Source of the DNA: Macrostomum lignano
Lineage: Eukaryota
NCBI GenBank assembly: GCA_002269645.1
Contig: NIVC01002240.1
Span: 1-64,000 of the forward strand
Reading direction: 5' to 3'
Length of the DNA: 64,000 bases
Below are positions 1-46,974 of the stretch, in pieces; position 1 is the first letter of the stretch; each line of letters begins with the position of its first letter. The position numbers and the translations under genes were made by a program. The notes under the pieces were generated by a model that made no database searches, had not been told where the DNA came from, and saw only the letters and a list, made by a program, of their open reading frames with translations.

Positions 1-3000
1 AAACTATTCGTCAGCTCCAATGCCGAGATGCAGCACGTTGTGCAGCAGGTCCGTCTAGCAGCCGTGGCTCCGGCGAGGAGCCTCAGCGCCGACTACACCG
101 ACTCCACCGCCGTTGCGAGAACAACCCAATCAGGGCCTGTTTGAGCACTCTGCTGGGTACCGGGCAGAGGCTACGGACGGTGAGCAGGGCTGATTGTGCT
201 ATGGTATGTGCTTTGGTCTTAACAGATTGAGTTTATAAAAAACTCGCTTCAGGAATCCAAGGGAGATCGCTGAATTTCCTTGTATTGTATTAGTTCAACA
301 GTGCGAGACATTCTTTCTCTTTTTTAAAATTCTGCCAAAGATTTAAAGGACCCATGACTACCCTTCTATGACTGAATCTCAAATTCCACTGGCTTTGACT
401 CACGAGCATAGCTACTCTCAATTACTCAAATAGCATAGCTACCCAGTGACTCACAGAGCATAGCTACCACACAATGACTCACAGAGCATACCTACCACAC
501 AATGACTCACAGAGCATACCTACCCCACAATGACTCACAGAGCATACCTACCACACAATGACTCACAGAGCATACCTACCCCAAAGTGCCTATTTCAACC
601 TACTGACCCGCAACTCTTGCAGGCTGACCAGAGGCCCTATCCCAGAGAGCGCTTCTACCGGGAGGCCGATGCCAGACAGCACACCGGTGGCAGCCGATAT
701 TTTCCCGCCGACACTGCCGTCGCAGCCTATGAAAATGACGCCGCGGCGGCCGCTGTGCCACCAGAGAAGCGGCAGCGTCTTGACCGCGGCGAGGGCTACT
801 ATAGGGAAGGCGGCGATGGCTACGGGCGAAACGGCGGCAGGGGAGGCGGCCGAGGAGGCTACGAACCGACCGCCTACGGCCGTAGAATCTACGCTGATCA
901 GCAGCAGCCGCAGTCGCGATATCCCATGCATCATCAGCAGACTTGGCCTCAGCAACGGCACAGCAACGGAGCCGAGTCCGAATTCACCGATCGGCAGCAG
1001 TACCGGCAGCCGTATCAGCAGCACCTCACCACCAGCGATATGGGAGGACAACGGCGGCAACTACGACAGTGGCTACGGCTCTTCTAGGCGCTGGGCTTCC
1101 AATCCTAGCAGAACCGACGAGGAAAACTACAGATATAGCCGCGGCGGCGACTGGAACGAGCAACACAACAGCGGCTGGACAATGCACAACAGATGGAAGG
1201 CGGAGAAGGTCGCAGCGGCGGCGGCCCTGCTTCTGATGCTGCTGCGGCTGCCGCGGCTTCTGCCCTGAATGCCTACTCAAACATCTACAGCGGCGGGGAA
1301 GACAATCCGCCGTCGACATCGTTGGCAGCGGCCTATTCGTCTAGCCGGGATCCTCGCTTGGCCGGCCGCAACCAGCGGGAGCCGGTGGACTCAACTGCCG
1401 AGGTCCCGTCGAAGCTGCTGCCGCTATTGAGAGCGAAGATCGATCGAGCTTCTATAACGAGCACCGGGACCCGAGATTCAAAGGCGAGCTGTACAACGCC
1501 GAGGCTCGGAGCCGGCCTGCCGATGAGGCCAAGCAGCCGCAGCCGCAGCTGCCACTCGGATCGGCGTCCAGCAGCGGCCGGAGCCGAGAACGGGACTACA
1601 AAGCTGAGGAAGAGGGCTACGTGTTCTACAAAGATCGCGGCCAGCAGCAGCAGAGAGGCGGTCGCTACGCCGGCGGCCGGGGCGGATCCCACCATTCGCG
1701 TCCGTATGACGATACAGCGGCGGCGGAGTTTGGCGACAGCGGCGGACGGCGAGGGCGTCAATCTTATGATAACTACGAAATGGGTGAGGAGGGCGGCGGT
1801 CCGCGCGGCGGCTGGCGAGGACGTGGTAGAGGCGGCCGCGGCGGCGGAGGGCCAAGCAATGGATTTCCGGCGCCGTACTCTGAGAGCGGCGGCTACCGGC
1901 CGAAGCCGTGGATAGCAGACGGCAGCGGCGGTAGCGGTCCAGCCGGTAGCAGCGGTTTCCAGCTGTTGCCGCGCAGCCGCCAGTCGGTGACGACGATTCC
2001 GTCGCCGCCGCGTTTCGCCAGCTGTGCCATCCCGGCCGGCCGAAGTCGCTGCTCGGCCCGGCGCCAAGTGGGCCGCCTCCAAACTGGCGGTCGGAGGCCG
2101 CTCAGTCCCCGGCGGCCGCTGCCGCCGAGCTGCCAAACCAGACCAGTTTGCAGCCGCCGCCGATGCCGCAGTTGCCGCGAGAGGCGCTGCCGGACTACAC
2201 GAAGGGCCCGCGCGACGAGCATTTCATAGCGCTGGCCGGCCTGCCTCTGGACGCCGATTATTCGGACGCCTGCGCCGCCCTTCCTGGAATTCGGCTGGCC
2301 CTGTCCGACGTAAAATTCGAGACTGATGCTCTTGGCAGGCGAACTGGACAGGCTTTTGTCCGACTAGTCGAACCGGCGGACGTGTTGAGGGCGATTAGCC
2401 AGTCAGGTGAGCTTCGTTACTAAAGTACTAAATTTTTTTAAGTTTGGGTAAAGCCAGCCTTCAAAAACTTTCTAAGAAACGAAATTTTCCCATCCTACTT
2501 AAGTCATATTTTATTCTGGCATGGAATGTCCTAACAACCCAATGGTGTATCCTACTTGTAAGTAGCAAGATAGGAGTAGGAATAAGTAGGAATAATTATC
2601 TGCAACTAATCAATAATCGTATTCGCCTTTTCGATCGCAGTAACCGACGACAGCGGCAGAGTGCACGTGAGCGCCTCCTGCGAGCACGAGTTCCGCTGCG
2701 CCAACGATCCGGACTTCACTGGCGACGCCGACGATCCAGACATCGGCGGCGGCAGCGGCGGCGTGGAATTCCCGCCCAGGCCGTCGCCCTACTACCTGGA
2801 CTGCTGTCTGGAGGTGAACGGCCTGCCGCCAGCCGATCGTAGCCGAGGATCTGCTGACTGTGTTCGGCGACGATCGGGCAATCGCCGATATGTCTGAAGA
2901 TTTGCACCTGGACCGGAGCAAGGACCCGAACTCGTGACGGCTTATCTGCGATTCGACGGCTTCGAACGATTTGCCGAGGCCACTCGGAGTGACGTCACCC

Positions 3001-12495: not shown

Positions 12496-15400
12496 ATGTA
12501 TACGATGTGCGTTGCAGATTCACTACAAGTCACCATCATGGATGATTTTTTTCGGCTGCTTGCCTCTATGTCAGCTGATAGTTCAGAGCTATCGGAAAAT
12601 ATTGTAAAACAGCACAGTAAAATGCTGGAAAAAATGAAATCAAAAATGGAGCGAATGGAAAACCGTCTGCTAAGGTCCAAAAGTCTTCCAAAAGAGGTTC
12701 GGAAGTTGATTGTAGCAGCGAGAATAGGGAATCATTCTAAGTGTTCAGGAATCTTAGTAAAAGGCACAGACGTCAATAGCAGAGGAGCCAGCAATGAAAC
12801 GGCTCTTTGTGCAGCAGCCTCTGGTGGACACTCAAACCTGTTAAATTTGCTTTTGGAGTATGGCGCGGATGTCAATGCTTCAGATGATGATGGGGACACT
12901 CCTTTGATGTATGCCGTCATGGCTGACGAACTAGGTTTCATCAAGTCCTTGGTAACCATCTGTGCGGATAAAGTTGATATCAATGCAAAGAACAAGTCTG
13001 GTAAGACAGGAATTGAGATGGCTTTTAAATCAGGAAAAGAGAAGATAGTGAAATTTCTCTCGCAAAGGAACGCAAAATTTGATTGCAAAGAAAAACAAAA
13101 AAGACGCTTTTTAAGTACGCGGAAGAAGGCAAAACGTATTTCATTAAGTTTTGGTTTGAACAACATTCTGCGCGTGAAACTGCAATAAACATGACTTGGA
13201 GGTCGCGTACCTTGGCCTTGGTTGCGGCTCTTAATGGCAAACTGAACGTTATAAAAGTCCTGTACGACAATGGTGCCAACTTGGATATCCCCGACGAGGA
13301 CGGCGACACGCCTTTATTTTGTGCCGCACAGAACGGATTCAGTGAAATTATTAGGTTCCTCGTGAGTAAAAATTGTGATGTGAATCACAGAAACAAGACG
13401 GGCAGAACTCCAATTTCGGCAGCCATAGGAAGTAGAAACTTTGAAATCGCTCGCTACTTCTACGATCACGGAGCCAGACTAACAGTTGTTGACATGGAAA
13501 AAATTTCCCTGTTGCTATTGTCAGTAGCCTCTGGTTCAACTGAGTTATTTAAATTTATGTGTGAGCATCTTCCAGAAGAAAGTCTGCAATTCGACGAAGT
13601 TACAACGGACGGCGAGACATGCCTTCTTGCGGCGTCCCAAACCAATAACGTTGAAATATTTAAGGCCATATTGGCGAAAAAAGTGGATTTCAACCATAGA
13701 AACAAACATGGCATGTCAGCAGCCTTGCGAGCAGCACATAATAATCAGCTTGAGATGGTGAAACTGCTGCAGGAGTTGGAGCCAACCTAGATCTACCAAA
13801 CAATGGCAACCAGACGGCGATTCTTTCTGCCGCCCAACAAGATAACATGCCTCTATTAAAACTTTTGGTAGATACTAATCGGTGCAACATTCACGTTCAA
13901 GACTACAATGGAGAGACACTTGTTTACCATGCAGTGAAAAATCGTGACATAGAAATGCTTTGCTTTCTGATCGAGTCCGGAGCCCCGATAGATGAAGCTG
14001 ACGTATGTGGCAACACTCCATTTATTGTTGCAGTTCATGATGACTGCATTGAAGCAGTACAAAGGTTGGTTGAAAAAGGCCGAGTAAATTTGAACAGGAG
14101 AAATGCCAAAGGACACACAGCAGTTCTTCTAGCAGTAAACAATGAGTCAGAAAATATGCTGAAATATCTCCTTGGCCTAGGTTGCGAAAGTGACATAAGT
14201 GACAGATCTGGCGATACGCCCCTTTTGCTTGCGGTGAAGAAAAAGAATTACAAACTGGCAAAGCTTCTTACAACACAAGAGAACAAGGAGTGCGATTCGA
14301 ACACTGCCGAAACGAAGACACGAAGTTCCTGCTTGCATGCATCAGCAAAAGCCACGAATCCTGCTTTTATCAATCTTCTAAGCCGAATAGGTGCGAATCT
14401 GGACATGGTGGATAGTGAGAGGAACACACCATTCGCAAAATCTGCTAAGAAGGATTCTGCTTACCTAACTATACTTTCCGCGAAAGGTGCAGATGTCAAC
14501 AGACGAAATTCTAGAGGTCAAAATGCAGCGCATTTGTGTACATTCCAAAAGATGAGCAATCTTGTAGTTCTTGAGGCCTTAGGCTGCTGTATTGATGTCG
14601 AAGATTTTGAAGGCAATGCTCCAATTCACCTGGCTGTAAAAAATAGAGAATTATCCAGCGTAGAATTCCTGATCGAACAGGGCGCTGAAATCGATTTTCC
14701 CAACCGAAAGGGCAATACGCCCATACATTTAGCCTGCAAAAAGGGTTCGAGCGTTATATGCGAAAGTCTTCTTGAGCAAAATGCCAAGTTGAAAACAATG
14801 AACAATCGCAAGCAGACCGAATTGATGTTGGCCTGCACGTCCAGAAATGAAAATATAGTTAAAATTCTTCTAATGCGTTACAGTAAGGAGGAAATTAATC
14901 TACAAGATATATTCAGAAGGACTGCATTGCATTATGCTGTGAAGTCGAAAAGCGAAAACGCCGCGAACCGCTTGATCGAAGCTGGTGCAGATGTAAACAT
15001 TCTGGATATTGATGGTCTCGCACCTATTCTACTTGCAGCTAAAACAAGCCAATGGAACGTTCTCAGTAGGGCTGTAGAAAATATCGATTCGAATTTATTG
15101 CTCAAATCAAAGAATGGAGAATCAATAGCACACTTTGCAGCCTCTAACTCAAGCATTGAGACTCTGAAAAAGCTCAAAGAGAAGCTAGTACCACTGACGG
15201 AACTAACTGAAGAAAGTGAGTCCTGTCTAACTCTGGCTGCCACTGGCGGATCAATAGAAGTTTGTGAGTTCCTCATTTCTGAAGGAAATCAAGTCAGTCA
15301 CTGTAACAGAAAAGGCGAGAATGCAATTTGCAAGGCTGCTAAAGCAAAAAATTCTGAGCTGTTTTTCCATCTGGCTACTTGCCACAGAGCGGATTTTCTG

Positions 15401-17913
15401 CTCAAGGATGAAAACGGCAACAGTAGCCTCTACTATTTTCTAGACGGCTCCGAGAGCCTTGATCATTCTGCCATATCAGAACTCCTTCTGGACGTTGATG
15501 AACAGAACCTAATCGATCTCAATTCACAGGGATTCGGACTCTGTCATATGGCAGCCAAGAAAGATAGCGTCAAGCTCCTTCGCGAGCTGCGGGACCGTGG
15601 ATGGGATCTGAGTAAAACTACAGCAAGTGGCGAAACTTGTATCACTCTTGCAGCGAAAACCAGCGGATCAAAGGCACTGAAGTTTCTACTTGAACTCTCT
15701 CGTAACAAGGACGCAATGGAACCAGAGCTTTCCAAAAGTAAACAAGAGCAAGAGAAGGCTTTTCGAATTTGTGCTGAACTAGGAAAGATAGAACTGACTG
15801 ACGAGTTATTCAGTCGTGGTGTTAATGTCAACGCCACCGACGAAGAGGGCAACACTGCTTTGATGATAGCTTGTCAGCACAAGCAGAATGACTTTGCCTT
15901 AAGCCTACTTTCCAGGGAATCGATACCTCGAGTTGATGTGGATGTAAAAAACCAAAACGGATTCTCTGCACTTCATTTTGCCAGCAAGAATCAGCTTACT
16001 GATTGCGTTGAAAAGCTGCTCAGCCTTGGAGCCAAAACTGACTCTGGTAATTCCGAAGGTTACACCTGTCTACATGAGGCCGTGAGGGGCCCTGACTCGA
16101 CTGACGTTGCCGAACTACTAATAGATTCTGGCTGTGATGTTAATCAGAAGACCTCTAGCGACGAGACAAGTTTATTGTTGGCACTTAAAAAAGGAAGTAA
16201 GAAATTGACTAAGTTTCTGATTAGTCGAGGAGCAAGAGTGGATGCAGAAAAAGTTCCAATATCTTTGGTGGTAAAAAAGTTCTTGTCGCAGGGCCGAAGA
16301 GAAATCATAACTTGGCTACTCAAGCTCGAACCAAAGCTGGATGTAAACAAAGTCGATGCTGATGGCCGTCATGTACTTTTTGACGTCATCGACCATGGAG
16401 CGGAAGAAATCCTGAGGCTTTTCATTTCTAGTGGAGCCGATATTGACTGCGAAGACAAACGTAGTGTCACACCATTTCTTCACGCTTTAGCAGTTGGCAG
16501 AGAAGATTTAGCAAAGGTATTGCTTGAACGAGGTTGCAACACTGAGAAACGAGCGGCCAATGGATTTGATTGTGTTTTGGCTGCTGTCTCTACGAGGCGT
16601 CTCTTCACTCTAAAATGGTTGTTTAATCATGTATCCGGACTAAACAGTCGTCCACAAGCAGAGATCAGAGGTAAAAATGCGTTGCACTTTTGCTGCCAAA
16701 TTGGACACCCACAGATGTTTAAACTGCTGCTTGAGAATGGCTTCGATCTGAACAAACAGTGCGATATTGGCTGGACTCCCATAGACTACGCGATAGCCGA
16801 AGGGCATCTGGCGATTATAAAGGCAGCAGATGCAATACAGAACAGGACCTTCTTGAGTAGATACGAACATCATGCAAACACGGCAAGTGATGTACCGTCA
16901 CCTTTCGCTAAAGCTGCTGCTAACGGCTATGAAAGCATATTCAAGTTTCTCCATTCAATCGGTGTTAACTTTGAGGGCATAGCCGATACAACCATTCCGT
17001 TTGCGTGTGGAAATGGACAGCAGCACATCATTAAATTTCTTCTTTCCGTTGGAGTTGATATCGAAGCGTATAAGAATCCAAAAAATGGCCAAACGGCTCT
17101 TCTTACAGCCATGTATTCGGGTGATTTGCACTTGATTAGCTTCCTTGTTGACAAAATTAGGTGTGACATTCGAGCTGTCTGTCATAACAGAAACACTGCT
17201 ATTCAAGGAGCAGTCACTACGAACCAAGAAAGAATCCTGAATTATCTCATTAGCAAGGGTGCACTAATTGACGAACCGGATGCCGAAGGAGACACTCCTG
17301 TTCTTGAAGCAGCACTTCTTGGACACCAGCGTATGCTAGACATCTTATTAGACCACAACTGCAACATAAAGAGGCTGAATAATCAGGCTCGAGGTGCTAT
17401 TCATATGGCTGTTATAAAAAATGACAACCCAGAAATGCTCCAGTTCCTAATCGATAAAGAAATCCCCGCGAACGGCAGGGATGAAAAAGGCAACACTGCC
17501 TGCATGATCGCCAGCTACCAAGGTCACCAAAAATCAGTAAAGCTCCTGCTTGAGCACGACCGAAGCCTCGGAAAAGAACGAAACGCAGACGGTTCAACGC
17601 CAGCACTGCTGGCCGCAATGAAAGGCAAGCATGAGGTTCTTCAAGTTCTGGCAGAAAATGATTGTTTGGAAGCTAATGACGTAGACAACGATGGCAGCAC
17701 AATCCTGATGATGGCCATTCAGTCCGGCTCTGTGCCAACAGTAAGAATGCTTCTGGAAACGGGTGACTGCAACACAACTGCTGTGAACAACAATGGGATT
17801 GGCGTTCAAACGCTGGCGACGCAGTGTCGCGATGAAGCGATGCTGGAGCTACTGAGGCAGTTCGGTATTGAAGGCCAACTGGCAGAGGCTGAGGCAACTG
17901 AGGCGCAGCAAAC
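12496..17913 (+). CDS. Giant ankyrin-repeat protein, main exon (~1800 aa, roughly 40-50 ANK repeats, short N-terminal coiled coil)
   Basis: Three track ORFs (12496-13188, 13083-13790, 13847-17917) join into one frame if one A is added to the A6 run at 13097-13102 (QKKTLFKY) and one G at ~13777 (ELGANLDLPN). Recurrent ANK consensus such as GDTPLMYAV, GNTPIHLAC, GFSALHFAS, GWTPIDYAI. Possible acceptor GTTGCAG near 12517. Donor AC|GTAAGA at 17914. Confidence 0.85.
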
Positions 17914-18002
17914 GTAAGATTTTTTATTTTTGCCAAACTGTACTATCAATTTCCCGCTGTTATTCTTATTCCGATAGTAATTTTACCTATCTTAATTTTA
18001 CC

Positions 18003-18358
18003 GGGGCCGTAGCCCAGCGGTAGCGCAGCTGCTCTGGTGTGCCAGCGACCCAGGCTCGATTCCAAGTGCAGTCACATTAATTTGGGGCTGAATTGGAATC
18101 TCGGCTTGGCTCTTCTCGTGCAATTAACGGCCTTGAGAGTCAACCCCCCAAGGCGCAGTGAAGTGTACATGCCTAACGATAAAATAAAGTTAGGGCCGCT
18201 GTACACTCCTGTGTGAGTGTGTGCCTGCGTACGTATCCGCGCGCTTGTATGCCTGCTCAGGGGAGTCGGCGGAATGGGCAGCAATGCCTCTCACCGGTTG
18301 TGTGCCTATGTCGTTTAAAGTGCGCCAGGGTGCACACAACCCCATGCCTGTAATAAAA
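18003..18358 (+). mobile_element. tRNA-derived SINE, copy 1
   Basis: Head GGGGCCGTAGCCCAGCGG (A-box-like) and GGCTCGATTCC (B-box-like), no acceptor-stem complement, AATAAAA tail. A near-identical copy lies on the minus strand at 26881-28130. Confidence 0.8.
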
Positions 18359-18599
18359 TTTTTTTTACCCAAGACTTAAGGGTCTTATTTTGTTAGTAAG
18401 TGTCGTTCATTTAAAAAGAATTAACTGTTGTCTCGGATCAAATGCTCGATATTCGTAGTTTGTAATTAAATAAATTCGCTGGATTTATACAATAACCCAA
18501 TTGCAGGAGTACCGTTGGGCATCCGATAGAACTGCTGATTTTTACCCCGGACACGTAAGTTTAAACCAGACGTAGCTAATGAGATGAATATCTTGCGCT

Positions 18600-18835
18600 A
18601 CGGTAAAGCAATTAGCAATTGCGGTACAGCGGATGCGGTAAAGCGGATGCGGTAAAGCGGATGCAGTGCGCACTGTGGCAAAGCGGATTGTGCCTAGCAC
18701 AATTCTTTTAAAGATATATATATGCTGCGGATGGACCATAGACAAAAAGCTCAAAGCGGCGGCAGAGGCGGCGGTGCCTAGCACAATCTTACTAGAGATA
18801 TATATATTAACCCGGTAGCTATAGTATACGGCTGG
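18600..18835. repeat. Cluster of short direct repeats, palindromes and (AT)n upstream of the Rep cassette
   Basis: GCGGTAAAGCGGAT repeats; perfect palindrome CAGTGCGCACTG at 18664-18675; hairpin ATTGTGC-CTA-GCACAAT at 18687-18703, partly repeated at 18774-18787; each hairpin copy is followed shortly by GATATATATAT. Confidence 0.7.
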
Positions 18836-18948
18836 GCTGCTCATTCATTTTTTCTGCATTATTGCCCACGCGCGCGTCCGACCGTTGTTAGCTGCAGCGA
18901 GCATCCAGCAGCCAGCGAGCAGCTGATTACGATAATAAAATATAAAAG

Positions 18949-19542
18949 ATGCAAAGTCCTCCATGGCCCGGCGATAGCCAATACGCAACCGCGGACGAGA
19001 TGGCGGCCGTCCTCCTGGAAGCCTGCGAGCAGGTTGACGCTGCTGAAGCCGCGGCCGCCGCCGCCGCCGCGGCCGCGGCCCCATCGACTGTTCCAAAGCG
19101 GCAAGAAGACGCGGAGCGGGCTGCACTAGAGGCCGACCTCTTCACGCTGGAGGCGGCGGATGAGCAGGCTGATTGCGTCATCACTGGGGTCTTCGTACCA
19201 GACAGCGACGAAGACGACGAGGCAAGTGGTCGCCTGCCATTATTCAAGACTGAACAGCAGAGTCAGCAGCAGCATCATCAGGAGACAGCGGCTGCAGTCG
19301 CTGCAAAGCCGGAACTAAAACGACAGCCGAGAATCGGGTCAGCTGGCATCAAGCCGGCGATAACGAGTCGCTGCTTCGTATCCCGAAGTGGCACGGCCGC
19401 GTCGCTAAGCGCCGCTAAGCAGCAACAAGGGCCGACACCGCCAAAGCGCCATTGTCAACGCCCGATAACGGCGGCGAACGCGCTGCCATCGTCGCCCTGC
19501 AGTCGCAGCAGTTCGATCCTATCGCCAGGTAGGAGTCGTTGA
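18949..19542 (+). CDS. Orphan ORF A of the intronic cassette (acidic, poly-Ala/Gln N-half; basic Ser/Pro C-half)
   Basis: 197 aa ATG-initiated ORF preceded by AATATAAAAG. GC-rich coding-like composition. Possible donor CAG|GTAGGA near 19529. No recognisable domain. Confidence 0.45.
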   Translation: MQSPPWPGDSQYATADEMAAVLLEACEQVDAAEAAAAAAAAAAAPSTVPKRQEDAERAALEADLFTLEAADEQADCVITGVFVPDSDEDDEASGRLPLFKTEQQSQQQHHQETAAAVAAKPELKRQPRIGSAGIKPAITSRCFVSRSGTAASLSAAKQQQGPTPPKRHCQRPITAANALPSSPCSRSSSILSPGRSR

Positions 19543-19621
19543 ATGCTGCTGCTCAGTTGCTGAGCATTCGTTGTTGACCATCGATCCTTACACTTTTAGT
19601 TCATAGCTCATTACCCATATT

Positions 19622-20074
19622 GTGAAATTATTTGTCATTGTTCACAACAACCACCACCAATCGTCCACTTTGACGACAGGCTGTTCTATCCCGTCGGACA
19701 CTCGGTCTTCGCAGCCGCCGCCGCCGCCGCCGCCGCCGCCGCCTCCGCCGCCACCTTATTACTGCGGCGGATATACCGACGAATGGAGCGCCGCGGCCGC
19801 CTCCTACGAGACGGCTGCTGCTCACCAGCATCATCAGCAGCCGCAGCCGACACGGGACACCACGTCCAGGCTGCTCGTGCCTCGCATTCTGCTGCACCCC
19901 GAGGATGCCGTAGACGCCTCCGTTGCAGGCAGCAATGGACAGCTGGCGAATCGGCGGGCCTACCGCGGCATGTCTGTGCTCAGGATAGCCTACGTGAAGC
20001 AACCTGGCGCGCTCAAGATGATGTTAATGTCAGCCTGGAGTGAATGGGCGACTCAACTGGCCATCAGTGAGTAG
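19622..20074 (+). CDS. Orphan ORF B of the intronic cassette (poly-Pro in one frame; an overlapping poly-Ala frame is also open)
   Basis: 150 aa open frame. Donor-like GTGAGT at 20067 and acceptor-like TGTGCAG at 20157. True frame and start are ambiguous. Confidence 0.35.
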   Translation: MKLFVIVHNNHHQSSTLTTGCSIPSDTRSSQPPPPPPPPPPPPPPYYCGGYTDEWSAAAASYETAAAHQHHQQPQPTRDTTSRLLVPRILLHPEDAVDASVAGSNGQLANRRAYRGMSVLRIAYVKQPGALKMMLMSAWSEWATQLAISE

Positions 20075-20428
20075 CGTGGGGTTGTTGCCCTTTCCTATTT
20101 ATCTACTTACTTTATTAAGCATTGCTGTTCTTTTCTTTTTATATCATTTCTGTGCAGCTCCTATGCGCGATCGACAGCGCTGATTTGCCAAACTATTGCC
20201 ATAGACTATATGAATATCACAATTAATGATATATCAATGCCATTTATTGAATTGCCACGACTGCAACACTGCCATAATCGTATAATCCCTCTTCCCCCAC
20301 AATCCTCATCTGTCGCGCGCCTCCGCCCCCTCTCTCTCTCTCTGCATCATCCCATTTCTGAATAATATTGCGCCGTCTTCTTCTTCTGCATCTAATTTCT
20401 CAACTCGACGATCAACACACAAAAAACA

Positions 20429-21811
20429 ATGTCAAAAAATAGGCGTCACTAAGAATGAGTTCGAGCCATCCAAGACGCACATTGTCGATCCATATGCGCC
20501 CCTGACCGACGATGTTAGTCGGGAGACGTCAAGCATTCACGCATTTGTCCGCACCGCCGTCCTCCACACTAATTGCGACTTGGTCGGGCAGCTGCGTCCG
20601 ATTTTCGCGTCAGGCCGCGACGCGGACACCTTTGCTGTGCGCCGCTGGACGCAAGTCGAGATCAGGAGCGTCCGCAGCGTCGAAGCCGAGCTGCGCCGGA
20701 TAACTGCGCTTGACCCGGTATGCTGCACAATTAATATCGATGACAGCTGCTTGTCGCGCACCATCGTACTCTATCGTTGGGCGATGTCGTATCCGGTCGA
20801 GGCGGTGCAGCCGGATCTTGACGACCCCGTGCTAAACGCGGGCAATCCGATGTTGACAAAGCAGTCTTTAGACTACTTCAACAACATTCAACTTCTGCGT
20901 CGGATGAGGGCAGAGGCGCTCTCGGGTTCGTCAGGCTCGGCGGCCAGCAGCAGAAGGCACTGTGCGGTGTCTGCGAGCGGCCGCCAGTGTCGTTCCGTAG
21001 TAGCGCCGCCGCCGCCGCCGCCGCCACTTTCGCCGCCTGTTCCGGTCCTTCTTCTTCGTCGGAGGACGCGTGTCGCCGCCGCAGCAACGGCGGCAGCCAG
21101 AGGGTGTCGCAGCAGCAGCCGCAGCCGCCACCGCCGCTGCCAGACGAACTTGTGGTGACGCACCTGGGCAGCGGTCTGTGCGACGTACAGATAGCCGTGT
21201 GCCGCGCCATGCAGAGGGAGATGCCGCCGCCCACAATATATTTGTGGGGGCCTTCCGGAGTTGGCAAGACGGCCATGGTGCACCTGCACTTTGGCAGGGA
21301 GCCTGTGTTCGTGCCGGACTTGACAACAAGTTTTCCTTTCGACGGGCTGCGCTTTAACTTGCATAAGTGCATTTTTGTCGATGAATTCGATGCCAGCCGT
21401 CCAATTCCGGGTCAACTGCTGCTACTGTTCAACCGTGATAAGTTCACGATCAATGAGAAATATCAAAGCCACAAAAAAGAGCCATGGCCACACGCCATTG
21501 TTGTGGCGGGCCACGCGGCCCCAGGGCAGATCAGTCGGGACTTCTTGCGCAGGATGACTGCAGTCGTGCACATCCCGCATAATCTGTTCGACTGCGACGG
21601 GTGCGACGCCAGTCAAGGTCGCAGCGGCAGAGGACGCCAAGATGCGGCGTCGCAGGCGGCGAAGAAAAATGTGCAGCAGCAGCAGCAGCAGCAGATGCCG
21701 CCGCCGCCACCGCCACCGCCGCAGTAGCAGGAGCGGCTGTTTGCCGACGATGCCGCCGCCGTCGCCGAAGAAGAAGAAGAAGAAGAACGCGAAGCAGCCT
21801 ACTATTGTTGA
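20429..21811 (+). CDS. CRESS-DNA-virus-like Rep: degenerate HUH endonuclease domain plus SF3 helicase; endogenous, with two frameshifts and one in-frame TAG
   Basis: Helicase frame is open 20822-21727: IYLWGPSGVGKT (Walker A, 21248-21271), PFDGL..CIFVDEF (Walker B, 21371-21388), FTINEKY (B'), IVVAGH (motif C-like), DFLRR (Arg-finger-like, 21542-21553). Upstream frame: IGVTKN, SSIHAFV (20535-20549), VEIRSVRSVEAELRRITALDP, DDPVL. TAG at 21725 lies within a CAG run and the frame continues to TGA at 21811. Confidence 0.7.
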
Positions 21812-21843
21812 ATAGAAACACTGATTGATTGATTGATTGATGG

Positions 21844-22366
21844 ATGGATGGATGGATGGAGGACATTATCGTTATTGTGCCGGCGGCGGAGGTGGGCCAG
21901 TCGTTAGGGGCTGCAGTACTGCTGCAACAATTTAGTGAGCTGCTGCAGCACGTCAGATGCACATTGCCCACACTTCCCTTTGTTTCTTCTCTATCTTCTA
22001 TCCCTTCTATCCTCTTTCCCCTTCTCTCTCTCTCCCTCTCTCTTTGGCCCTTACTTCCCCTACTTTGTTGAGGCGATGCGATGCAGGTACCGAGGTTGTG
22101 CTGCAGGCAGAAAGGTACACCTGTTCTCGTGTTCCAGTGTTTGTGTGTGTTTGTTTTTCAGTTTGTTTCGTCGTCGTTTGGAAATCGACGTGATCTCAGC
22201 CTGGCTGGCTGAATGCAACTGCAGTGTTGGTTTTGTTTCTAAGGAGTTCGATGTGCATTTTTTGTCGCTTCTGTGCGCCAGATGGGGCCGCCTAAGCAAC
22301 CGTTATTTAAATATTTCGCCGCTTCTTCGCTATTGTATACCAAACCAAACCAAACAGCAAACTTGA
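21844..22366 (+). CDS. Possible small, perhaps spliced, ORF D at the 3' end of the cassette
   Basis: Short coding-like stretches (MEDIIVIVPAAEVGQSLGAAVLLQQFSELLQH; LEIDVISAWLAECNCSVGFVSKEFDVHFL) separated by pyrimidine tracts ending in AG. Confidence 0.25.
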
Positions 22367-22385
22367 AATCTGTGGACTATAATAA

Positions 22386-25035
<2,650 letters not shown>

Positions 25036-25079
25036 TAATACTATAAGTTGACCGAAATATTCTTCCCGTCATAATTTAG

Positions 25080-26880: not shown

Positions 26881-28130
26881 TTTTTATTAGAGGCAGGGGG
26901 GTTGTGTGCACCCTGGCGCACTTTAAGCGACATTGGCACACAACCGGCGAGAGGCATTACTGTCCATTCCGCCGACTCCCCTGAGCAGGCATACAAGCGC
27001 GCGGATACGTACGCAGGCACACACTCACACAGGAGTGTACAGTGGCCCAAACTTTATACGAGGGGTGTCCCAAGGGTTCCCGGAATGTCTAACGTAGCTC
27101 TTCAACAGAGCCATGAAATTTCACGCCCATGGTGTCAAATGAAAGGAAATTTTGTCACAAAGAATACAAAGTTAAAATCATGTAGTTGCTGAGATGCCAT
27201 GGCTCAATGGGGAGTTGCTGAGATGCCATGGCTCAATGGCATGTTGATATCTTTTTTTATTCAAGAGCTACAGCAAGAAACTTGCGCAAAGGTCAGGGGT
27301 AGTGTTACACAACCTCAACAATCTATGGCAATAATTTTTTCATCTCCATTTTTGGAGTTTTTCATTTTGAATTCATTCACAGCAGACTGGCCATCTCTAA
27401 AGCGTTCGATTAATCCGTAAATTGCAGTTTTTTTCAGGCTGTTCTCACCGTGGATGGAGAATAAGTGGTCAGAAATCTTGGCTCCACTCCATCCTACTGA
27501 CCAAAGGGCAAAAACTTGACTTCGCTGACTTTCAAGGCTCTGAAGAGAACTCATTTTCGCAAAGAAATTTCAAGTTGAAAGCAAGCGCTTGGTACGAATT
27601 ATCTGCACTCGCGCAAAAGCTCAGATTAGCTTTATGAGCATTTCTGCTTTTTCCATAGACACTACCACGTCTTTCTGACACGTCAGTAGCACGAATTGAA
27701 AATGAAAAACTCCAAAAATGGAGATGAAAAAATTATTGCCATAGATTGTTGAGGTTGTGTAACACTACCCCTGACCTTTGCGCAAGTTTCTTGCTGTAGC
27801 TCTTGAATAAAAAAAGATATCAACATGATTTTAACTTTGCATTCTTTGTGACAAAATTTCCTTTCATTTGACACCATGGGCGTGAAATTTCATGGCTCTG
27901 TTGAAGAGCTGCGTTGGACATTCCGGGAACTTTTGGGACACCCCTCGTATTATCGTTAGGCATGTACACTTCACTGCGCCTTGGGGGGTTGACTCTCAAG
28001 GCCGTTAATTGCACGAGCAGAGCCAAGCCGAGATTCCAATTTAGCCTCAAATTAATGTGACTGCACTTGGAATCGAGCCTGGGTCGCTGGCACACCAGAG
28101 CAGCTGCTCTACCGCTGGGCTACGGCCCCC
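26881..28130 (-). mobile_element. tRNA-derived SINE, copy 2, interrupted by a mariner derivative
   Basis: Reverse complement of 18003-18358, flanked by a 13 bp direct repeat CATTATTTACATT (26868-26880 and 28131-28143). Confidence 0.85.
27059..27947 (-). mobile_element. Non-autonomous mariner derivative (889 bp) with long TIRs
   Basis: TA duplication at 27057-58 and 27948-49. TIRs begin CGAGGGGTGTCCCAA and extend ~260 bp. The centre holds a minus-strand mariner HTH remnant (GAKISDHLFSIHGENSLKKTAIYGLIERFRDG). Confidence 0.88.
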
Positions 28131-30182: not shown

Positions 30183-33100
30183 TCAGTTGTTCTCATCGTC
30201 TGAGCTGTCCAGACTGATAACTATTGGCTCTGAGGGTCTTGGGGCAGCAGGGGCAGGCGGAGGAGGTTGGGGCTGCTGCGGCTGCTGAGCATTCGAAGGC
30301 GAGGCCGCCGCGTTCGCTGCAGCCGCCGGCGTTGCCGCCGCTACCGCCGCCCCATCGCCGTCCGTCAACTCATCGTCGCTCTCCGTCAGATCAAAATGAT
30401 TGACAGTGGCGGCTGCCGCCCTTCCATTCTGAGTCTCCGATCCAGCAGCAGCCGTGGCAGATGCCGAAGCAGCTGACGGATCCGACGCAGTCGACTTGGC
30501 CGCGGCGCCGCTGTCGGCCGCTGGATGGTCAGCCGAGTCGCGATCGACGGCTGCCGACCAGCTGCCGTCTGGCAGGAACTGCAGCCGCTCCAGCTCGGAG
30601 CTGGTCGGGCTGGACAGAACCTCCTGGCGAGCGAGTTGGGAATGCGTGCAGAATTATCTGACTTCAACTCGCTTTCAATCGTTTCTTCTGATACTCTAAT
30701 GCCATCTGGGAGATGCTTGCCATCTGGGAGATGCTTGCCATCTGGGGGATGCTTGCCATCTGGGGGATGCTTGCTAGGTGGGAGAAGCTTGCTATCTGGG
30801 AGATGCTTGCCATCTGGGGATGCTTGCCATCTGGGGGATGCTTGCTAGGTGGGAGAAGCTTGCTATCTGGGAGATGCTTGCCATCTGGGGGATGCTTGCC
30901 ATCTGGGGATGCTTGCTAGGTGGGGGAAGCTTGCTAGGTGGGGGAAGCTTGCTATCTGGGGGATGCTTGCTAGGTGGGAGAAGCTTGCTATCTGGGAGAT
31001 GCTTGCCATCTGGGGGATGCTTGCCATCTGGGGGATGCTTGCTAGGTGGGGGAAGCTTGCTATCTGGGGGATGCTTGCTATCTGGGAGATGCTTGCCATC
31101 TGGGGGATGCTTGCCAGGTGGGAGAAGCTTGCTATCTGGGAGATGCTTGCCATCTGGGGATGCTTGCCATCTGGGGATGCTTGCTAGGTGGGGGAAGCTT
31201 GCTATCTGGGAGATGCTTGCCATCTGGGGGATGCTTGCCATCTGGGGGATGCTTGCTAGGTGGGAGAAGCTTGCTATCTGGGAGATGCTTGCCATCTGGG
31301 GGATGCTTGCCATCTGGGGGATGCTTGCTAGGTGGGGGAAGCTTGCTATCTGGGAGATGCTTGCCATCTGGGGATGCTTGCTAGGTGGGGGATGCTTGCT
31401 AGGTGGGGGAAGCTTGCCATCTTGGGGATGCTTGCTATCTGGGGGATGCTTGCCATCTGGGGGATGCTTGCTAGGTGGGGGAAGCTTGCCATCTGGGGGA
31501 TGCTTGCTATCTGGGGGATGCTTGCCATCTGGGGGATGCTTGCTATTTGGGGATCAATGCTTGAATGCTGTCTGGGGATGCTTGCTGTCTTGGGATGTTT
31601 TTTTTTAGAGGGAATGTCTTGTTTTTTATGAAGGCTTTATTTCGCTGTCTATTTGTTATTTGTAAAGAACAAAGATTCTATCCAGATGCGCCCCATCGGG
31701 GGGCGAAGATTGCTTGTCTGATACTCTAATTGAGACTAAATTGGATTCATAGATTGAGTCTTCATCGGATGACAAAGACCTCATTCGTCTACGTCTGCCA
31801 ACTGATTTTTTTATTGTAGATTCCGTACCTTCAGCCTTCTTGTCAATGACGACTCGGACTTGAATTTATAGGACTACAGAAAGGAGCGATTACCTAGTTA
31901 CATAGACCAAGAAGCCTCATTGCAGTCAGTGCAGGTAACACAGGTAAAATAAGATAGAAGTGACTCTTAGACGACTCTAAAACAACCAGATGTCAAGGCA
32001 CAAGTCGCCAAAAGTCGATCGCATAAGAGTCAATTCGACTCTGAAACGACTCTGAGGCGTTCTTTCTGAATATAGCTGTCGCTCTAGTCGTTAAAAAGCA
32101 ACAAGAGTCGCCTCAGGGTCGCTAGTGAGTTATTTGAAATGACTCTTTTATCGATTCTTGTCACGGTAACAAGTTCAACGGGGTGCCTTCAACTCTTTTC
32201 AGTGCTGTTCGTGTCTACTGAGAAACTCTTGAACTTTCTATCCAAAGTGTTGCAACTATCGCTGATATAACTTACCTGAAAATAGGCATCAATATAGAGC
32301 TGGCCATAGGGCGACGGCTGGTCGCAGAACGGGCACTTCCACACGGGCTTCTTGGCATTCATAGCCAAGTAGGAGTAGGCATCGAAGCACTGCACATGAG
32401 AGCAGGCCTCCGATCGCATTGGCGTGCTCATGCGCATCTTGCCCAGCGGGCACTTCAACGAAGCCACCAGCTCAGTGACGGCCAGCTCGCAGTCGGACGG
32501 GCTCAGCTTCTCACGGATCATTGTTCGAGTGAAATCGGCCGCGCGAATGCCGCGATCCCGAATCCGATCGATCAGGTCAATCGGGGTCAGGGCGCGGACT
32601 AGGCAGATCTTTTGCGGGGTTTTATTGTTTTGTATATGAAATATGAATGTAATAACTATTATATACGATAATAGCAACATCAAGAAGAACAGGGCCGGGT
32701 GAGGGGTCACTGCCCTCTTACAGACATTTGATGAGATTATACTATAGTTTAACTACAGGGAAGCCTTCCATGAGAGGTCAATGGAGGTCATTTGCCCCCC
32801 CCACTCCGTAGTGAAAATGGTGATCGTGCTGCCTAGAAAGAAAAGATTAAGATCAGTGGAATTTTCGCCCACCCCAACGACAAAGTATGCTTGCCTAGTT
32901 GCCTATGGTTGCCTACTAACCCGCAGTTTTGTTTTCAGTTCGTATATGCAAATTAGTTTATTATTTAGTAGGCAAGGGGGATGGGCTATTCAGCTGCGTA
33001 CTAACCACAGCCTACTGTGCTTAACTTGCAGCGCTAATGTCCAATGTGGAGGGTGGCTACGGACAATGACTAGCAAGAGTTTTATCGAAAGATTTGAAAT

Positions 33101-40250: not shown

Positions 40251-40470
40251 GTCTTTTTAATTAGCCCTTTAATAAAAGCTTTCAATAAAAATTTACACTG
40301 CTTTTACCCTACACAGATTTGAACCCAGGTTGCTATATTAACAGGCTGAGAAGCTGGGCTTGCATCCTATTTGTCTGCTAGAAAAAGCAGTTTTGTTTGC
40401 TAGCAGGCAAAAAGGTGGCAAACAAAAAAATAATTGCACACCTGCCAAAGTAGGCCTCTTAGAACTTTTA

Positions 40471-45959: not shown

Positions 45960-46974
45960 CTAGAAGTTACCGTTACTGTTCGTTGTGGCCCATTCGATTT
46001 CATTGATAGTGAAATCCATTTCCAAGTCATCTATCGTGAAGACTTGCTGTCCTTGCTGCTCACTTTTCGATGTAGATATGATGGAATTTGCATATCGTTG
46101 CATCGCTTGTGTCGGCTGTTTTGGTGTGTACTTAGCGTTGCGTAGCCTGTAGCTAGCTATCGTTTTCCGAGGCGCCTCATGGCTCATGCCTTGTTGCTGC
46201 CGATTTTTGATATTGCTGCCATGGCTTTTGTGGTTTCCGATTGTTGAATGGCTGTCTCGGTTTGTAATACTTGTCGTCCGATGAGGACAATTAATTTGAT
46301 AATGTCCTTCTTGTCCGCAGTAGTAGCATCTGGCTTGTGCTTGTTCGTTTCTTCTTTTTTGTTCGGCGATAGCAGCTGTTTGATGTTGCATCAGCTTGTT
46401 TAATTGCTGCGTCAACTTCTGCACGTCAGTGTTGCCTGTTGTCATTAATGGGGCACTGGCTTCCCCATTGCATTCCGCACCGCAGAAGTTCTTCTTCGGT
46501 CTCGATGTTTTCTCGCAAAAGTCTGTCCCGGAGTGACAGCTGTGCATTGTTTATTACATGCAGGATCAGATTTTGTTCACGATCCATCAATCGCTGTCGC
46601 TCTCTAGCGGCTAATTCTGCCGCACCCAAAGGTGGTTGGTTCGCAGCTGACAGTTGGCTGATGCAGTGCCTTAATTATCTGACAGACGTCGTCCACACAA
46701 AGGTTAGAAAGGATTCCGTTGCTTGCATTCTTCTGTTGTGCAGCTTGTGCAGTAGCACCGATCTGTTTGTGCCACAACGGTTGAAGTGCGCGCGCAGTTG
46801 AATGATTAATGCCGGGTAATTTTGCTGTGTTGCCGCATCCAGTTTGCCGTAAATTTCTCGCGCAGTGCCTTGGAGGAGAGGTGGCAACAGTTGAGCCTTT
46901 TCTGGATTTTGTAGGTTGTATTCCCTACATACCAAGTCGAAATGATCCACGAAAGTGTTAAAATCTTTTTCCAT
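45960..46974 (-). pseudogene. Retrotransposon Gag relic (Ty3/Gypsy-like) with CCHC zinc knuckle
   Basis: FNTFVDHFDLVCREYNL..KAQLLPPLLQGTAREIY (capsid-like) and RCYYCGQEGHYQINCP (CX2CX4HX4C). Internal stop at 46675 and a frameshift near 46440. No pol follows. Confidence 0.8.

What the first reader, a model, noticed from the sequence alone, without database searches (positions are those of the whole stretch)
18540..22385. Capsid-less, same-strand multi-ORF Rep cassette hidden in a host intron
Seen: ORF A (18949), ORF B (19622), Rep (20429) and ORF D (~21850) are all on the + strand, GC-rich and low-complexity, separated by short AT- or pyrimidine-rich spacers containing splice-like signals (GTAGGA 19529, GTGAGT 20067, TGTGCAG 20157). 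The block sits inside the 17914-25079 intron of the ankyrin gene. I see no Arg-rich capsid-like ORF, TIR, LTR or TSD. Inference: this may be an undescribed family of Rep-encoding integrated elements (virus-, plasmid- or transposon-like) with accessory genes adapted to host expression, possibly spliced or SL trans-spliced and polycistronic.
Basis: partly seen in the sequence, partly recalled or inferred. Interest (0 to 1): 0.75.

Follow-up and report, generated by a model that had tools for sequence, protein, structure and literature searches.

The report
Endogenized, nuclease-dead viral Rep gene
The block is most likely one spliced host-genome gene descended from the replication protein (Rep) of a small circular DNA virus that has lost its DNA-cutting residues, so it is a viral fossil or co-opted gene and not a hidden multi-gene mobile element.

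Summary
The Rep call is right; the cassette idea is not. The + strand of 20.4-21.7 kb encodes a Rep-like protein. Its SF3 helicase part matches a profile of unnamed Reps from 2.0-2.8 kb contigs at E=1e-18 and gives a confident model (pLDDT 87) whose best viral fold matches are CRESS-DNA virus Reps. The part upstream is homologous to the nuclease half of those Reps (hhalign 96%, E=1e-9), but the catalytic Tyr and one HUH His are replaced. The helicase motif C Asn is also replaced.

The closest relatives include two Macrostomum lignano (flatworm) proteins; the rest are unassigned metagenome and sequencing-run contigs. They include an intact 465-codon frame and two multi-exon copies with what looks like a shared intron position. 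All that cover the site lack the Tyr, so this looks like a cellular gene family of viral origin.

ORF B has no ATG and joins the Rep frame in phase through a GT-AG intron (20067-20442). It is most likely an upstream exon. ORF A may be another exon, on weak evidence. ORF D shows no coding signal. None of them has a homolog beside Rep in the related loci I could compare.

The window copy has one frame change and no in-frame stops. No ankyrin exon lies downstream, so the "intron" setting is unsupported. I found no replication origin motif, capsid, TIR or LTR.

The parts
18949..21727 (+). Rep-derived gene, full putative extent (three putative exons; one frame change, no in-frame stops)
   Evidence: Profile of exogenous-type Reps against the six-frame window: E=1e-18 for the helicase frame and E=0.013 for the upstream frame, with nothing else in 64 kb. 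Two HSPs in two frames and 0 stops against the intact relative L008.
18949..19528 (+). Putative exon 1 (ORF A): Ala/Gln/Ser-rich low complexity; membership in the gene is weak
   Evidence: The only ATG-started ORF of the block. The donor cagGTAGGA at 19529 joins in phase to 19680. No homolog in Pfam, PHROGs, PDB, phage tblastn or L001/L002/L003/L008. Length reached by 19/500 shuffles; GC by codon position .70/.57/.63.
19529..19679 (+). Putative intron 1 (151 nt, GT-AG, in phase)
   Evidence: Enumeration of in-phase GT..AG pairs. Lies in a GC dip between GC-rich exons. Size is within the 60-450 nt range of candidate host pyruvate carboxylase introns.
19680..20066 (+). Putative exon 2 (most of ORF B): poly-Pro stretch, then the N-terminal lead-in of the Rep-like protein up to the first strand of the nuclease-like fold
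   Evidence: ORF B has no ATG at its start. Its tail has a coding-like GC profile.62/.49/.72. The joined model aligns colinearly with the uninterrupted L008 frame across the junction, E=9e-13. The tail alone is not significant.
20067..20442 (+). Putative intron 2 (376 nt, tcaGTGAGT...AAAAAATAG, in phase); absent from P0019, L006 and L008
   Evidence: The only in-phase acceptor for this donor. In the AF2 model the strand ATQLAISVTK (block pLDDT 91) spans the junction. The same stretch is continuous in P0019, L006 and L008. No TSD or TIR seen at its ends.
20443..21727 (+). Putative exon 3: nuclease-like domain, linker, Cys motif, SF3 helicase-like domain and low-complexity tail
20535..20912 (+). 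Remnant of the Rep HUH-nuclease domain (motif II and III positions) plus linker; catalytic residues replaced
   Evidence: hhalign of family alignment A7 against exogenous-type Reps A6: probability 96.4%, E=1.2e-9 over 109 columns. Column counts: Tyr in 27/27 of the others, Arg here; first His in 26/27, Ser here; second His kept.
21137..21634 (+). SF3 (AAA+) helicase-like domain with Walker A, Walker B and Arg finger kept, and motif C Ser-Asn replaced by Gly-His
   Evidence: Exhaustive phmmer: 24 hits, including classic CRESS Reps. AF2 pLDDT 87, pTM 0.82. Foldseek PDB hits: papillomavirus E1, AAV Rep, PCV2 Rep ATPase, Vientovirus Rep. BFVD top hits are 'ATP-dependent helicase Rep [uncultured virus]', E=1e-8. 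Column counts.
21844..22366 (+). 'ORF D': non-coding, microsatellite and CT-rich sequence downstream of the gene
   Evidence: Flat codon-position GC. No Pfam hit of note. No homolog in related loci.
18003..18362 (+). Neighbour: SINE-like repeat with a tRNA-like head and its own TTTTACC target duplication
   Evidence: Inverted second copy at 26882-27057 / 27950-28129, 94-98% identical. The TSD is read directly from the sequence. ARAGORN and Rfam call no tRNA.
22385..24866 (.).
   Evidence: 22385-23500 and 24567-24866 recur at 40470-44351 with 86-90% identity.
12496..17917 (+). Neighbour: ankyrin-repeat gene, ending on TAA at 17915-17917
   Evidence: Pfam Ank hits. No ankyrin-coding sequence downstream of 17881. 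It lies in three overlapping frames.

Best explanation
The block is one gene of viral descent sitting in host DNA. It is not an element with several genes.

Shown:
- About 1.2 kb of the + strand is homologous to the Rep of small circular ssDNA (CRESS-type) viruses. A nuclease-domain remnant is followed by an SF3 helicase domain.
- The nearest exogenous-looking relatives are an unnamed Rep lineage on 2.0-2.8 kb contigs.
- The residues a Rep needs to nick and join DNA are replaced: the catalytic Tyr and the first HUH His. The helicase motif C Asn is also replaced. Walker A, Walker B and the Arg finger are kept.
- The same Tyr loss, together with family-specific Cys motifs (CxxC before the helicase, H-x4-C-x-G-x-C after it), is shared with relatives that are only 25-45% identical.
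- Among those relatives is one intact 465-codon frame. Two others are multi-exon copies whose exon ORFs both break right after Walker B, which fits a shared intron.

Inferred:
- The nuclease was lost once, early. The protein then evolved under selection as a cellular P-loop ATPase, probably DNA-binding, and spread by duplication.
- It cannot start rolling-circle replication, so the locus is neither mobile nor replicative.
- In the window the gene is read through two host-type GT-AG introns: ORF A (weak), then ORF B, then the Rep exon.
- This copy carries one frame change. It is therefore either a young pseudogene or an assembly indel.
- The host is probably a flatworm related to Macrostomum, but this was not verified.
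For: Rep homology:
- Exhaustive phmmer returns CRESS Reps with Viral_Rep + RNA_helicase domains.
- The exogenous-type profile hits the helicase frame at E=1e-18. The co-linear upstream frame is the second-best fragment of 1470 (E=0.013).
- hhalign of the N-terminal family against exogenous-type Reps: 96.4%, E=1.2e-9.
- The family profile's best PDB match is a Replication-associated protein, 9pqj.
- The AF2 model has pLDDT 87. Foldseek returns SF3 helicases, and CRESS Reps top BFVD.

Dead nuclease: column counts.

Cellular family:
- Two members are M. lignano proteins.
- L008 has an intact 465-codon frame.
- L006 and L007 carry the family as several exon ORFs, and in both the break falls right after Walker B.
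- Cys motifs are conserved.
- Codon-position GC equals that of the host pyruvate carboxylase exon.

One spliced gene:
- ORF B and the Rep frame lack ATGs.
- The GT(20067)-AG(20442) pair is in phase, and it is the only in-phase option for that donor.
- The joined model aligns colinearly to L008 across the junction, E=9e-13.
- An AF2 strand spans the junction at pLDDT about 91.
- Candidate host introns are 60-450 nt with similar donors and A-rich acceptors.

Not an element:
- No NANTATTAC in the block and no bounding repeats.
- The flanking repeats are independent insertions.
- ORFs A, B (front half) and D are absent beside Rep in L001, L002, L003 and L008.
Against: - This copy has a frame change.
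- The M. lignano copy L001 has four stops and a frame change in its nuclease-like part, so at least some members are decaying.
- ORF B's tail is not significantly similar to relatives on its own (42 of 1000 shuffles reach its score).
- hhalign does not extend into ORF B.
- The Foldseek search with the N-terminal model gave no significant hit. HUH Rep domains appear only at ranks 3, 18 and 25, with E>1.
- There is no transcript evidence for any splice junction.
- The organisms behind the metagenome relatives are unknown, so 'cellular' rests on introns, flanks and one named species.
- The window, L001 and L008 copies are GC-rich islands in AT-richer flanks. That pattern also fits repeated integration of foreign DNA.
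Confidence: 0.6

Rival explanations
1. A dead endogenous viral element. A Rep fragment of a CRESS-type virus was integrated once and is simply decaying. ORF A, ORF B and the splice-like signals are chance features of GC-rich low-complexity DNA, and nothing here is expressed or selected.
For: - One frame change in the window copy.
- The M. lignano copy has 4 stops and a frame change in its nuclease-like part.
- Several relatives are known only as short ORF fragments.
- Long ORFs arise easily in this composition: 19/500 shuffles match ORF A, and long antisense ORFs exist.
- Catalytic residues are lost.
Against: - There are no in-frame stops over about 430 homologous codons.
- Walker A, Walker B, the Arg finger and the family-specific Cys motifs are kept at 25-45% identity.
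- An intact 465-codon relative exists, and two multi-exon relatives break at the same place.
- The Tyr is lost in every member that covers the site, and it is replaced by different residues. That points to one early loss followed by long survival.
Confidence: 0.24
2. A recently integrated, nearly complete genome of a GC-rich circular Rep-encoding virus. Its Rep is spliced, and ORF A (and perhaps ORF D) are remnants of its unrecognised capsid or accessory gene. This is.
For: - The GC-rich island is about 3.0 kb, near the 2.0-2.8 kb of the contigs that carry the related Reps.
- The same island pattern is seen in L001 and L008.
- ORF A has no homolog anywhere, as unrecognised capsids often do not.
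Against: - A replicating virus cannot lack the catalytic Tyr, yet the whole subfamily lacks it.
- There is no origin-like nonanucleotide in the block.
- ORF A has no Arg-rich N-terminus and no homolog beside Rep in L001 or L008.
- Codon-position GC matches a host gene.
- The capsids of the exogenous relatives were not compared (see referred steps).
Confidence: 0.08
3. One reading: an undescribed family of Rep-encoding integrated mobile elements that carries accessory genes A, B and D, expressed polycistronically from a host intron.
For: The ORFs are on the same strand, and splice-like signals lie between them. SL trans-splicing is said to occur in Macrostomum (own knowledge; not tested).
Against: - There are no termini or TSD, and no second copy in 64 kb.
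- The accessory ORFs do not co-occur with Rep elsewhere.
- ORF B has no start codon and reads into Rep through an intron.
- ORF D is non-coding.
- The nuclease is dead.
- The ankyrin intron is not supported.
Confidence: 0.05
4. A contaminant or chimeric assembly: a foreign GC-rich contig joined into a host scaffold.
For: A sharp GC step at both edges. Frame changes in this gene and in the ankyrin gene hint at imperfect sequence.
Against: - Unique AT-richer sequence, not a repeat, lies between the island and the flanking repeats on both sides.
- The island has host-like introns and host-like codon-position GC.
- The same gene family sits inside a 220 kb M. lignano contig.
Confidence: 0.03

Closest known systems
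Rep (replication initiator) of CRESS-DNA viruses, phylum Cressdnaviricota; solved examples returned here: PCV2 Rep ATPase domain (8xms) and Vientovirus FB Rep (9pqj)
   Same: Two-domain order, with a nuclease-type N-terminal half followed by an SF3 helicase. Walker A, Walker B and the Arg finger are present. The fold of the helicase domain matches.
   Different: The catalytic Tyr, the first HUH His and the motif C Asn are replaced. There are extra Cys motifs and long low-complexity stretches. The gene has introns and lies in chromosomal DNA with no origin or capsid. No Pfam Viral_Rep or Gemini_AL1 hit for the window protein.
Unnamed Rep lineage on 2.0-2.8 kb Logan/JGI contigs and two 2.58 kb IMG/VR contigs (alignment A6; P0023, P0028-P0048 and others)
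   Same: These are the nearest sequence relatives outside the subfamily. They are homologous over both the nuclease half and the helicase half.
   Different: They keep the Tyr (27/27) and both His residues (26/27 and 25/27), and most keep the motif C Ser-Asn. They have no Cys motifs. They sit on genome-sized small contigs and carry no public name. Pfam sees only DUF5906 (24/28), with weak Gemini_AL1 in 6/28.
Rep-derived endogenous viral elements and co-opted Rep genes of circovirus-, geminivirus- and parvovirus-like origin in animal and plant genomes (own knowledge; context in PMC6668415, PMC10193959)
   Same: A viral Rep sequence fixed in a host chromosome, without a capsid, with inactivating changes, and sometimes kept as an open frame.
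   Different: This is a multi-member family with introns, a uniformly dead nuclease and new Cys motifs. The donor lineage is unclassified. I found no report for Macrostomum.
Parvovirus-related NS1 sequences of Platyhelminthes (PMC10433990)
   Same: A viral SF3 helicase gene resident in flatworm genomes. The exogenous-type relatives' helicase profile matches AAV Rep40/68 at E=2e-7.
   Different: The window protein gives no Parvo_NS1 Pfam hit, and only 2/28 of the A6 relatives give a weak one. The related exogenous contigs are 2-2.8 kb, not parvovirus-sized. That paper does not mention Macrostomum.
Helitron RepHel transposase
   Same: A eukaryotic genomic gene that combines a HUH-type Rep domain with a helicase.
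   Different: By established knowledge, Helitrons use a Pif1-like SF1 helicase and a two-Tyr nuclease. Here the helicase is SF3/AAA+, there is no Tyr and there are no Helitron-type ends.

Membership tests
CRESS-DNA virus Rep (HUH nuclease + SF3 helicase) | Significant sequence homology to Rep over the helicase domain | tested here: met
   phmmer hits to Reps with Viral_Rep + RNA_helicase domains. Exogenous-type profile E=1e-18. The family profile's best PDB hit is a Replication-associated protein, E=0.003.
CRESS-DNA virus Rep (HUH nuclease + SF3 helicase) | SF3 helicase fold with Walker A, Walker B and Arg finger | tested here: met
   AF2 pLDDT 87. Foldseek returns E1, AAV Rep, PCV2 Rep and Vientovirus Rep. 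BFVD is topped by CRESS Reps. Motif residues are kept.
CRESS-DNA virus Rep (HUH nuclease + SF3 helicase) | Helicase motif C (Ser/Thr-Asn sensor) | tested here: not met
   Gly-His in the window. No member of the subfamily has Asn in that column, against 10/14 of the other Reps.
CRESS-DNA virus Rep (HUH nuclease + SF3 helicase) | HUH motif II (two His residues) | tested here: not met
   The first His (26/27 in exogenous-type Reps) is Ser in the window. The second His is kept.
CRESS-DNA virus Rep (HUH nuclease + SF3 helicase) | Motif III catalytic Tyr (with the following Lys) | tested here: not met
   Tyr 27/27 and Lys 27/27 in exogenous-type Reps; Arg and Ala in the window. The Tyr position is Trp in P0019 and Leu in L003, and Arg in L008 and Ser in L006 read by eye from their translations.
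CRESS-DNA virus Rep (HUH nuclease + SF3 helicase) | HUH nuclease fold of the N-terminal domain, including the motif I strand | tested here: inconclusive
   hhalign homology covers the motif II and III half. In the AF2 model (pLDDT 73) a confident strand sits at the motif I position. Foldseek gave no significant hit; Rep nuclease domains appear only at E>1.
CRESS-DNA virus genome / integrated provirus | Origin stem-loop with a conserved nonanucleotide, and a capsid gene | tested here: not met
   No NANTATTAC within 18.5-22.4 kb. Only short tandem repeats lie upstream. There is no capsid-like ORF. Capsids of the exogenous relatives were not compared.
Endogenous viral element (EVE) | Virus-derived sequence contiguous with host sequence on both sides | tested here: met
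   Host ankyrin and pyruvate carboxylase genes and host repeats lie on the same 64 kb. A relative sits inside a 220 kb M. lignano contig.
Co-opted (domesticated) viral gene | Open frames kept in divergent copies, host-type introns, and constraint on part of the protein | tested here: inconclusive
   Met in relatives: an intact 465-codon frame in L008, exon ORFs in L006 and L007 that break at the same place, and conserved motifs. The window copy has one frame change and the L001 copy is broken. No dN/dS or expression data.
Helitron | Pif1-like SF1 helicase and a two-Tyr Rep motif | tested here: not met
   The helicase is SF3/AAA+. There is no catalytic Tyr.
Parvovirus NS1-derived sequence | Match to Parvo_NS1 (PF01057) | tested here: not met
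   No hit for the window protein at E<=1. Only 2/28 of the exogenous-type relatives give a weak hit.
   No bounding repeats, and no second copy in the window. ORFs A, B (front half) and D are absent next to Rep in L001, L002, L003 and L008. Genome-wide copy number is not testable here.

The most novel reading that the evidence does not exclude
The window gene belongs to a so far unnamed cellular gene family, in flatworms and in other unidentified eukaryotes. An ancestor captured the Rep of a small circular DNA virus, lost the nuclease, gained a Cys-rich (possibly zinc-binding) module and introns, and kept the SF3 ATPase under selection. It could work, for example, as a DNA-binding motor or as a virus-derived interference factor against related viruses.
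Probability: 0.4. Interest if true: 0.6.

Novelty: new member of a known kind. Interest (0 to 1): 0.4.

Why it matters
Rep-derived insertions are a known kind of viral fossil, so the presence of one is not surprising. Three things are worth noting here.

- The donor lineage, Reps on 2.0-2.8 kb contigs, carries no public name and has only weak Pfam matches.
- The endogenous subfamily looks like more than debris. Every member that covers the site lacks the catalytic Tyr. The members share new Cys motifs and an ATPase core at 25-45% identity. One relative is fully open and others carry introns.
- If expression and constraint are confirmed, this would be a clear animal example of a circular-ssDNA-virus replication protein turned into a cellular ATPase. 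It would also be a marker for ancient virus-flatworm contact.

For the scan, the lesson is practical. GC-rich low-complexity ORFs separated by AT-rich spacers were exons and introns of one gene, not a cassette.

Tried and rejected
- Pfam, PHROGs and single-sequence PDB searches of the window pieces gave only generic P-loop hits below cut-off.
- The word-indexed protein search failed twice: no hits with the helicase piece, and only 2 hits with alignment A3 because low-complexity words filled the candidate list.
- BLASTP of the N-terminal piece against P0023 was not significant. Only profile-profile comparison showed the homology.
- MAFFT first placed motif I on 'VLRIAYV' in ORF B. With more sequences and the AF2 model, the strand that spans the exon junction is the better candidate.
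- A very short intron in place of the frame change was considered and rejected, because the gap between the homologous segments is too short.
- The two SINE-like copies (18003 and 26882-28129) were considered as TIRs of a 10 kb element. This was rejected because the left copy has its own target duplication.
- The metagenome scan with the helicase piece found nothing.
- Rfam and ARAGORN found nothing in the window.
- Literature searches found no report of this family in Macrostomum.

Full report
OBSERVATION

The block from about 18.85 to 21.83 kb is 58-64% GC against about 43% around it. The quoted splice-like strings are at the stated places.

Four details differ from the description.
- The ATG at 20429 opens a 7-codon frame that is not the Rep frame.
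- ORF B begins only on a GTG of the bacterial ORF list, and the Rep-homologous frame has no ATG near its start.
- The Rep-like sequence occupies two reading frames.
- ORF D has flat GC by codon position and is CT/microsatellite sequence.

GC-rich, low-complexity coding sequence is not foreign to this genome. The pyruvate carboxylase exon at 56.3-58.2 kb has the same codon-position GC (.60/.41/.68) as the Rep pieces (.58-.61/.43-.44/.67-.70).

IS IT A REP?

Pfam, PHROGs and single-sequence PDB searches gave only generic P-loop hits. An exhaustive phmmer of the P-loop piece (21137-21634) found 24 proteins. They fall into three groups:
- a set of close relatives, up to 44% identical;
- classic CRESS-DNA virus Reps with Viral_Rep + RNA_helicase domains;
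- a third Rep type.

A profile search then recovered 28 proteins of that third type, 157-573 aa long, most on contigs of 2.0-2.8 kb. Two more relatives lie on 2.58 kb IMG/VR contigs. I fetched only 264-nt pieces of those two.

A profile built from the exogenous-looking Reps (alignment A6: 24 of those proteins plus four found earlier) was searched against every six-frame fragment of the 64 kb window. It hits the helicase frame at E=1e-18. The co-linear upstream frame is the second-best fragment, at E=0.013. Nothing else in the window scores.

Profile-profile comparison of the upstream part (window plus three relatives) with the exogenous-type Reps gives 96.4% probability, E=1.2e-9. The match covers the motif II and motif III positions and the linker.

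The helicase piece folds with pLDDT 87 and pTM 0.82. Foldseek returns RuvB, papillomavirus E1, AAV Rep40/68, the PCV2 Rep ATPase domain and Vientovirus Rep from the PDB. In BFVD, 'ATP-dependent helicase Rep [uncultured virus]' comes first, at E=1e-8. The family profile's best PDB sequence match is also a Replication-associated protein.

The region is therefore Rep-derived.

IT IS NOT A WORKING REP

- The catalytic Tyr is present in 27 of 27 exogenous-type Reps. It is Arg in the window, Trp in P0019 and Leu in L003. Read from their translations, it is Arg in L008 and Ser in L006.
- The Lys that follows the Tyr (27/27) is Ala in the window.
- The first HUH His (26/27) is Ser. The second His is kept.
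- In the helicase, the Walker A Gly/Lys/Thr, the Walker B Asp-Glu, a conserved Lys and the Arg finger are kept.
- The motif C Ser-Asn (12/14 and 10/14 in other Reps) is Gly-His in the window. No member of the subfamily has Asn in that column.

The N-terminal model (pLDDT 73) gave no significant Foldseek hit. Circovirus, nanovirus and plasmid Rep nuclease domains appear only at E>1. The HUH fold is therefore not demonstrated; only the homology is.

WHAT THE RELATIVES SAY

Two close relatives are Macrostomum lignano proteins. One of them (P0001) lies on a 220 kb contig. It also sits in a roughly 2.2 kb GC-rich, low-complexity island in AT-richer flanks. There the helicase part is an intact 252-aa ORF, but the nuclease-like part shows four stops and a frame change relative to an intact relative.

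L008 is a 3.4 kb JGI metagenome contig. It carries one uninterrupted 465-codon frame that covers the lead-in, the nuclease-like half, the Cys motif and the helicase.

L006 and L007 are AT-rich contigs from two samples. They carry the family as several exon ORFs on one strand. In both, the exon ORF breaks right after Walker B and the next exon ORF resumes the helicase, which fits an intron at a shared position.

The subfamily shares a CxxC motif before the helicase and an H-x4-C-x-G-x-C motif after it. I did not see either motif in the exogenous-type Reps.

Members that are only 25-45% identical share the loss of the Tyr, with different replacement residues. They also share conserved neighbouring positions and a conserved ATPase core. 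This is what one early loss of nuclease function followed by long evolution under constraint would give. A rolling-circle virus could not have carried such a protein, so the family most likely evolved inside cellular genomes. This step is inference.

ONE GENE, NOT A CASSETTE

For the donor GTGAGT at 20067, only one AG is in phase with the Rep frame and free of stops: the one at 20442, which gives a 376-nt intron. The joined reading places the strand ATQLAISVTK across the junction. AlphaFold models it as a confident strand (block pLDDT 91) at the position of Rep motif I. The corresponding stretch is continuous in P0019, L006 and L008.

BLASTP of the joined model against the uninterrupted L008 frame gives a single colinear alignment across the junction, E=9e-13. 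On its own, however, the ORF B tail is not significant: 42 of 1000 shuffles reach its score. hhalign does not reach into it either.

The tail of ORF B has a coding-like GC profile. Candidate introns of the host pyruvate carboxylase gene are 60-450 nt, with GTGAGT/GTGAGA donors and A-rich acceptors. The proposed intron fits that pattern.

ORF A can be joined to ORF B by cagGTAGGA(19529)...AG(19679), 151 nt, in phase. But ORF A has no homolog anywhere, its length is matched by 19 of 500 shuffles, and its codon-position profile is ambiguous.

None of ORF A, the poly-Pro front of ORF B, or ORF D has a counterpart next to the Rep-like gene in L001, L002, L003 or L008.

SETTING

The ankyrin frame ends on TAA at 17915-17917, and no ankyrin-coding sequence follows 17881. 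The 'intron' placement is therefore unsupported, and the gene is simply downstream of ankyrin.

On the left lies a SINE-like repeat (18003-18362) with a tRNA-like head and its own TTTTACC target duplication. On the right, exactly at 22385, a dispersed repeat begins. It recurs at 40470-44351.

There is no NANTATTAC in the block. There are no bounding inverted or direct repeats, no Rfam hit and no second Rep-like sequence in the window.

STATE OF THIS COPY

Against L008, the window gene shows two segments in two frames and no in-frame stops. That is one frame change.

The neighbouring ankyrin gene lies in three overlapping frames. The frame change in the Rep-derived gene may therefore be an assembly indel rather than a mutation. 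I did not read through it.

VERDICT

The Rep identification stands. The 'capsid-less multi-ORF cassette in an intron' does not.

The best reading is a Rep-derived, nuclease-dead, intron-bearing cellular gene, or its freshly broken copy. It belongs to an unnamed family known from M. lignano and from unassigned eukaryote-like contigs, and it descends from an unclassified lineage of small circular Rep-encoding viruses.

It is a new member of a known kind (Rep-derived endogenous viral genes). There is a moderately interesting possibility of genuine co-option.

Noticed in passing
window 18003-18362; 26882-27057 and 27950-28129: A SINE-like repeat with a tRNA-like head and a TTTTACC target duplication. 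A second, inverted copy (94-98% identical) is split by an 892-bp insert that has its own long inverted repeats (27045-27374 / 27693-27961). ARAGORN and Rfam call no tRNA.
   Followed up: partly
window 22385-24866 and 40470-44351: A dispersed repeat of 2.5 kb or more, 86-90% identical, containing a long GA-rich microsatellite. The second copy is interrupted at about 40945-42597 by a 1.65 kb segment made of nested inverted 14-15-nt tandem repeats (arms 98% complementary).
   Followed up: partly
window 12496-17917: The ankyrin-repeat gene runs through three overlapping reading frames with continuous ankyrin repeats across the changes. It is either a pseudogene or the assembly has indel errors. 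This bears on how to read the frame change in the Rep-derived gene.
   Followed up: partly
window 53798-58243: A pyruvate carboxylase gene in at least five exons (Biotin_carb_N, CPSase_L_D2, Biotin_carb_C, HMGL-like, PYC_OADA, Biotin_lipoyl). I used it as the host yardstick for intron size, splice signals and codon-position GC.
   Followed up: yes
window 45960-46547 (- strand): A 195-aa ORF with a zf-CCHC zinc knuckle, possibly a retroelement Gag remnant.
   Followed up: no
window 4.8-6.0, 30.7-31.6, 33.3-35.1, 36.0-36.5, 39.7-40.3, 50.2-50.7, 51.3-51.9, 59.0-59.6 kb: Many minisatellites, with periods of 17, 18, 22, 24, 34, 41-42 and 81 nt. Several create long spurious ORFs.
   Followed up: no
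window 530-2229 and 30288-31608: Further GC-rich (55-65%) blocks with GCC/GCG-type low-complexity ORFs and no Pfam hit. Their nature is unknown, and they share only triplet-repeat similarity with the Rep block.
   Followed up: no
window 18601-18667 and 18677-18807: Short tandem repeats just upstream of ORF A: a 14-nt unit repeated 3-4 times, and a 47-nt pair 84 nt apart. They were considered as iterons, but no stem-loop or nonanucleotide accompanies them.
   Followed up: partly
relatives P0001-P0008, P0013, P0019, L006, L007, L008: Subfamily-specific Cys motifs flank the helicase: CxxC before it, and H-x4-C-x-G-x-C after it. I did not see them in the exogenous-type Reps. They may form a metal site.
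   Followed up: partly
L001 8500-10700 (M. lignano NIVC01001938.1): The M. lignano copy keeps an open helicase part (annotated as a 252-aa hypothetical protein), while the nuclease-like part upstream is broken by four stops and one frame change. A second M. lignano member (P0009) is fused in its gene model to a GPCR-like sequence.
   Followed up: partly
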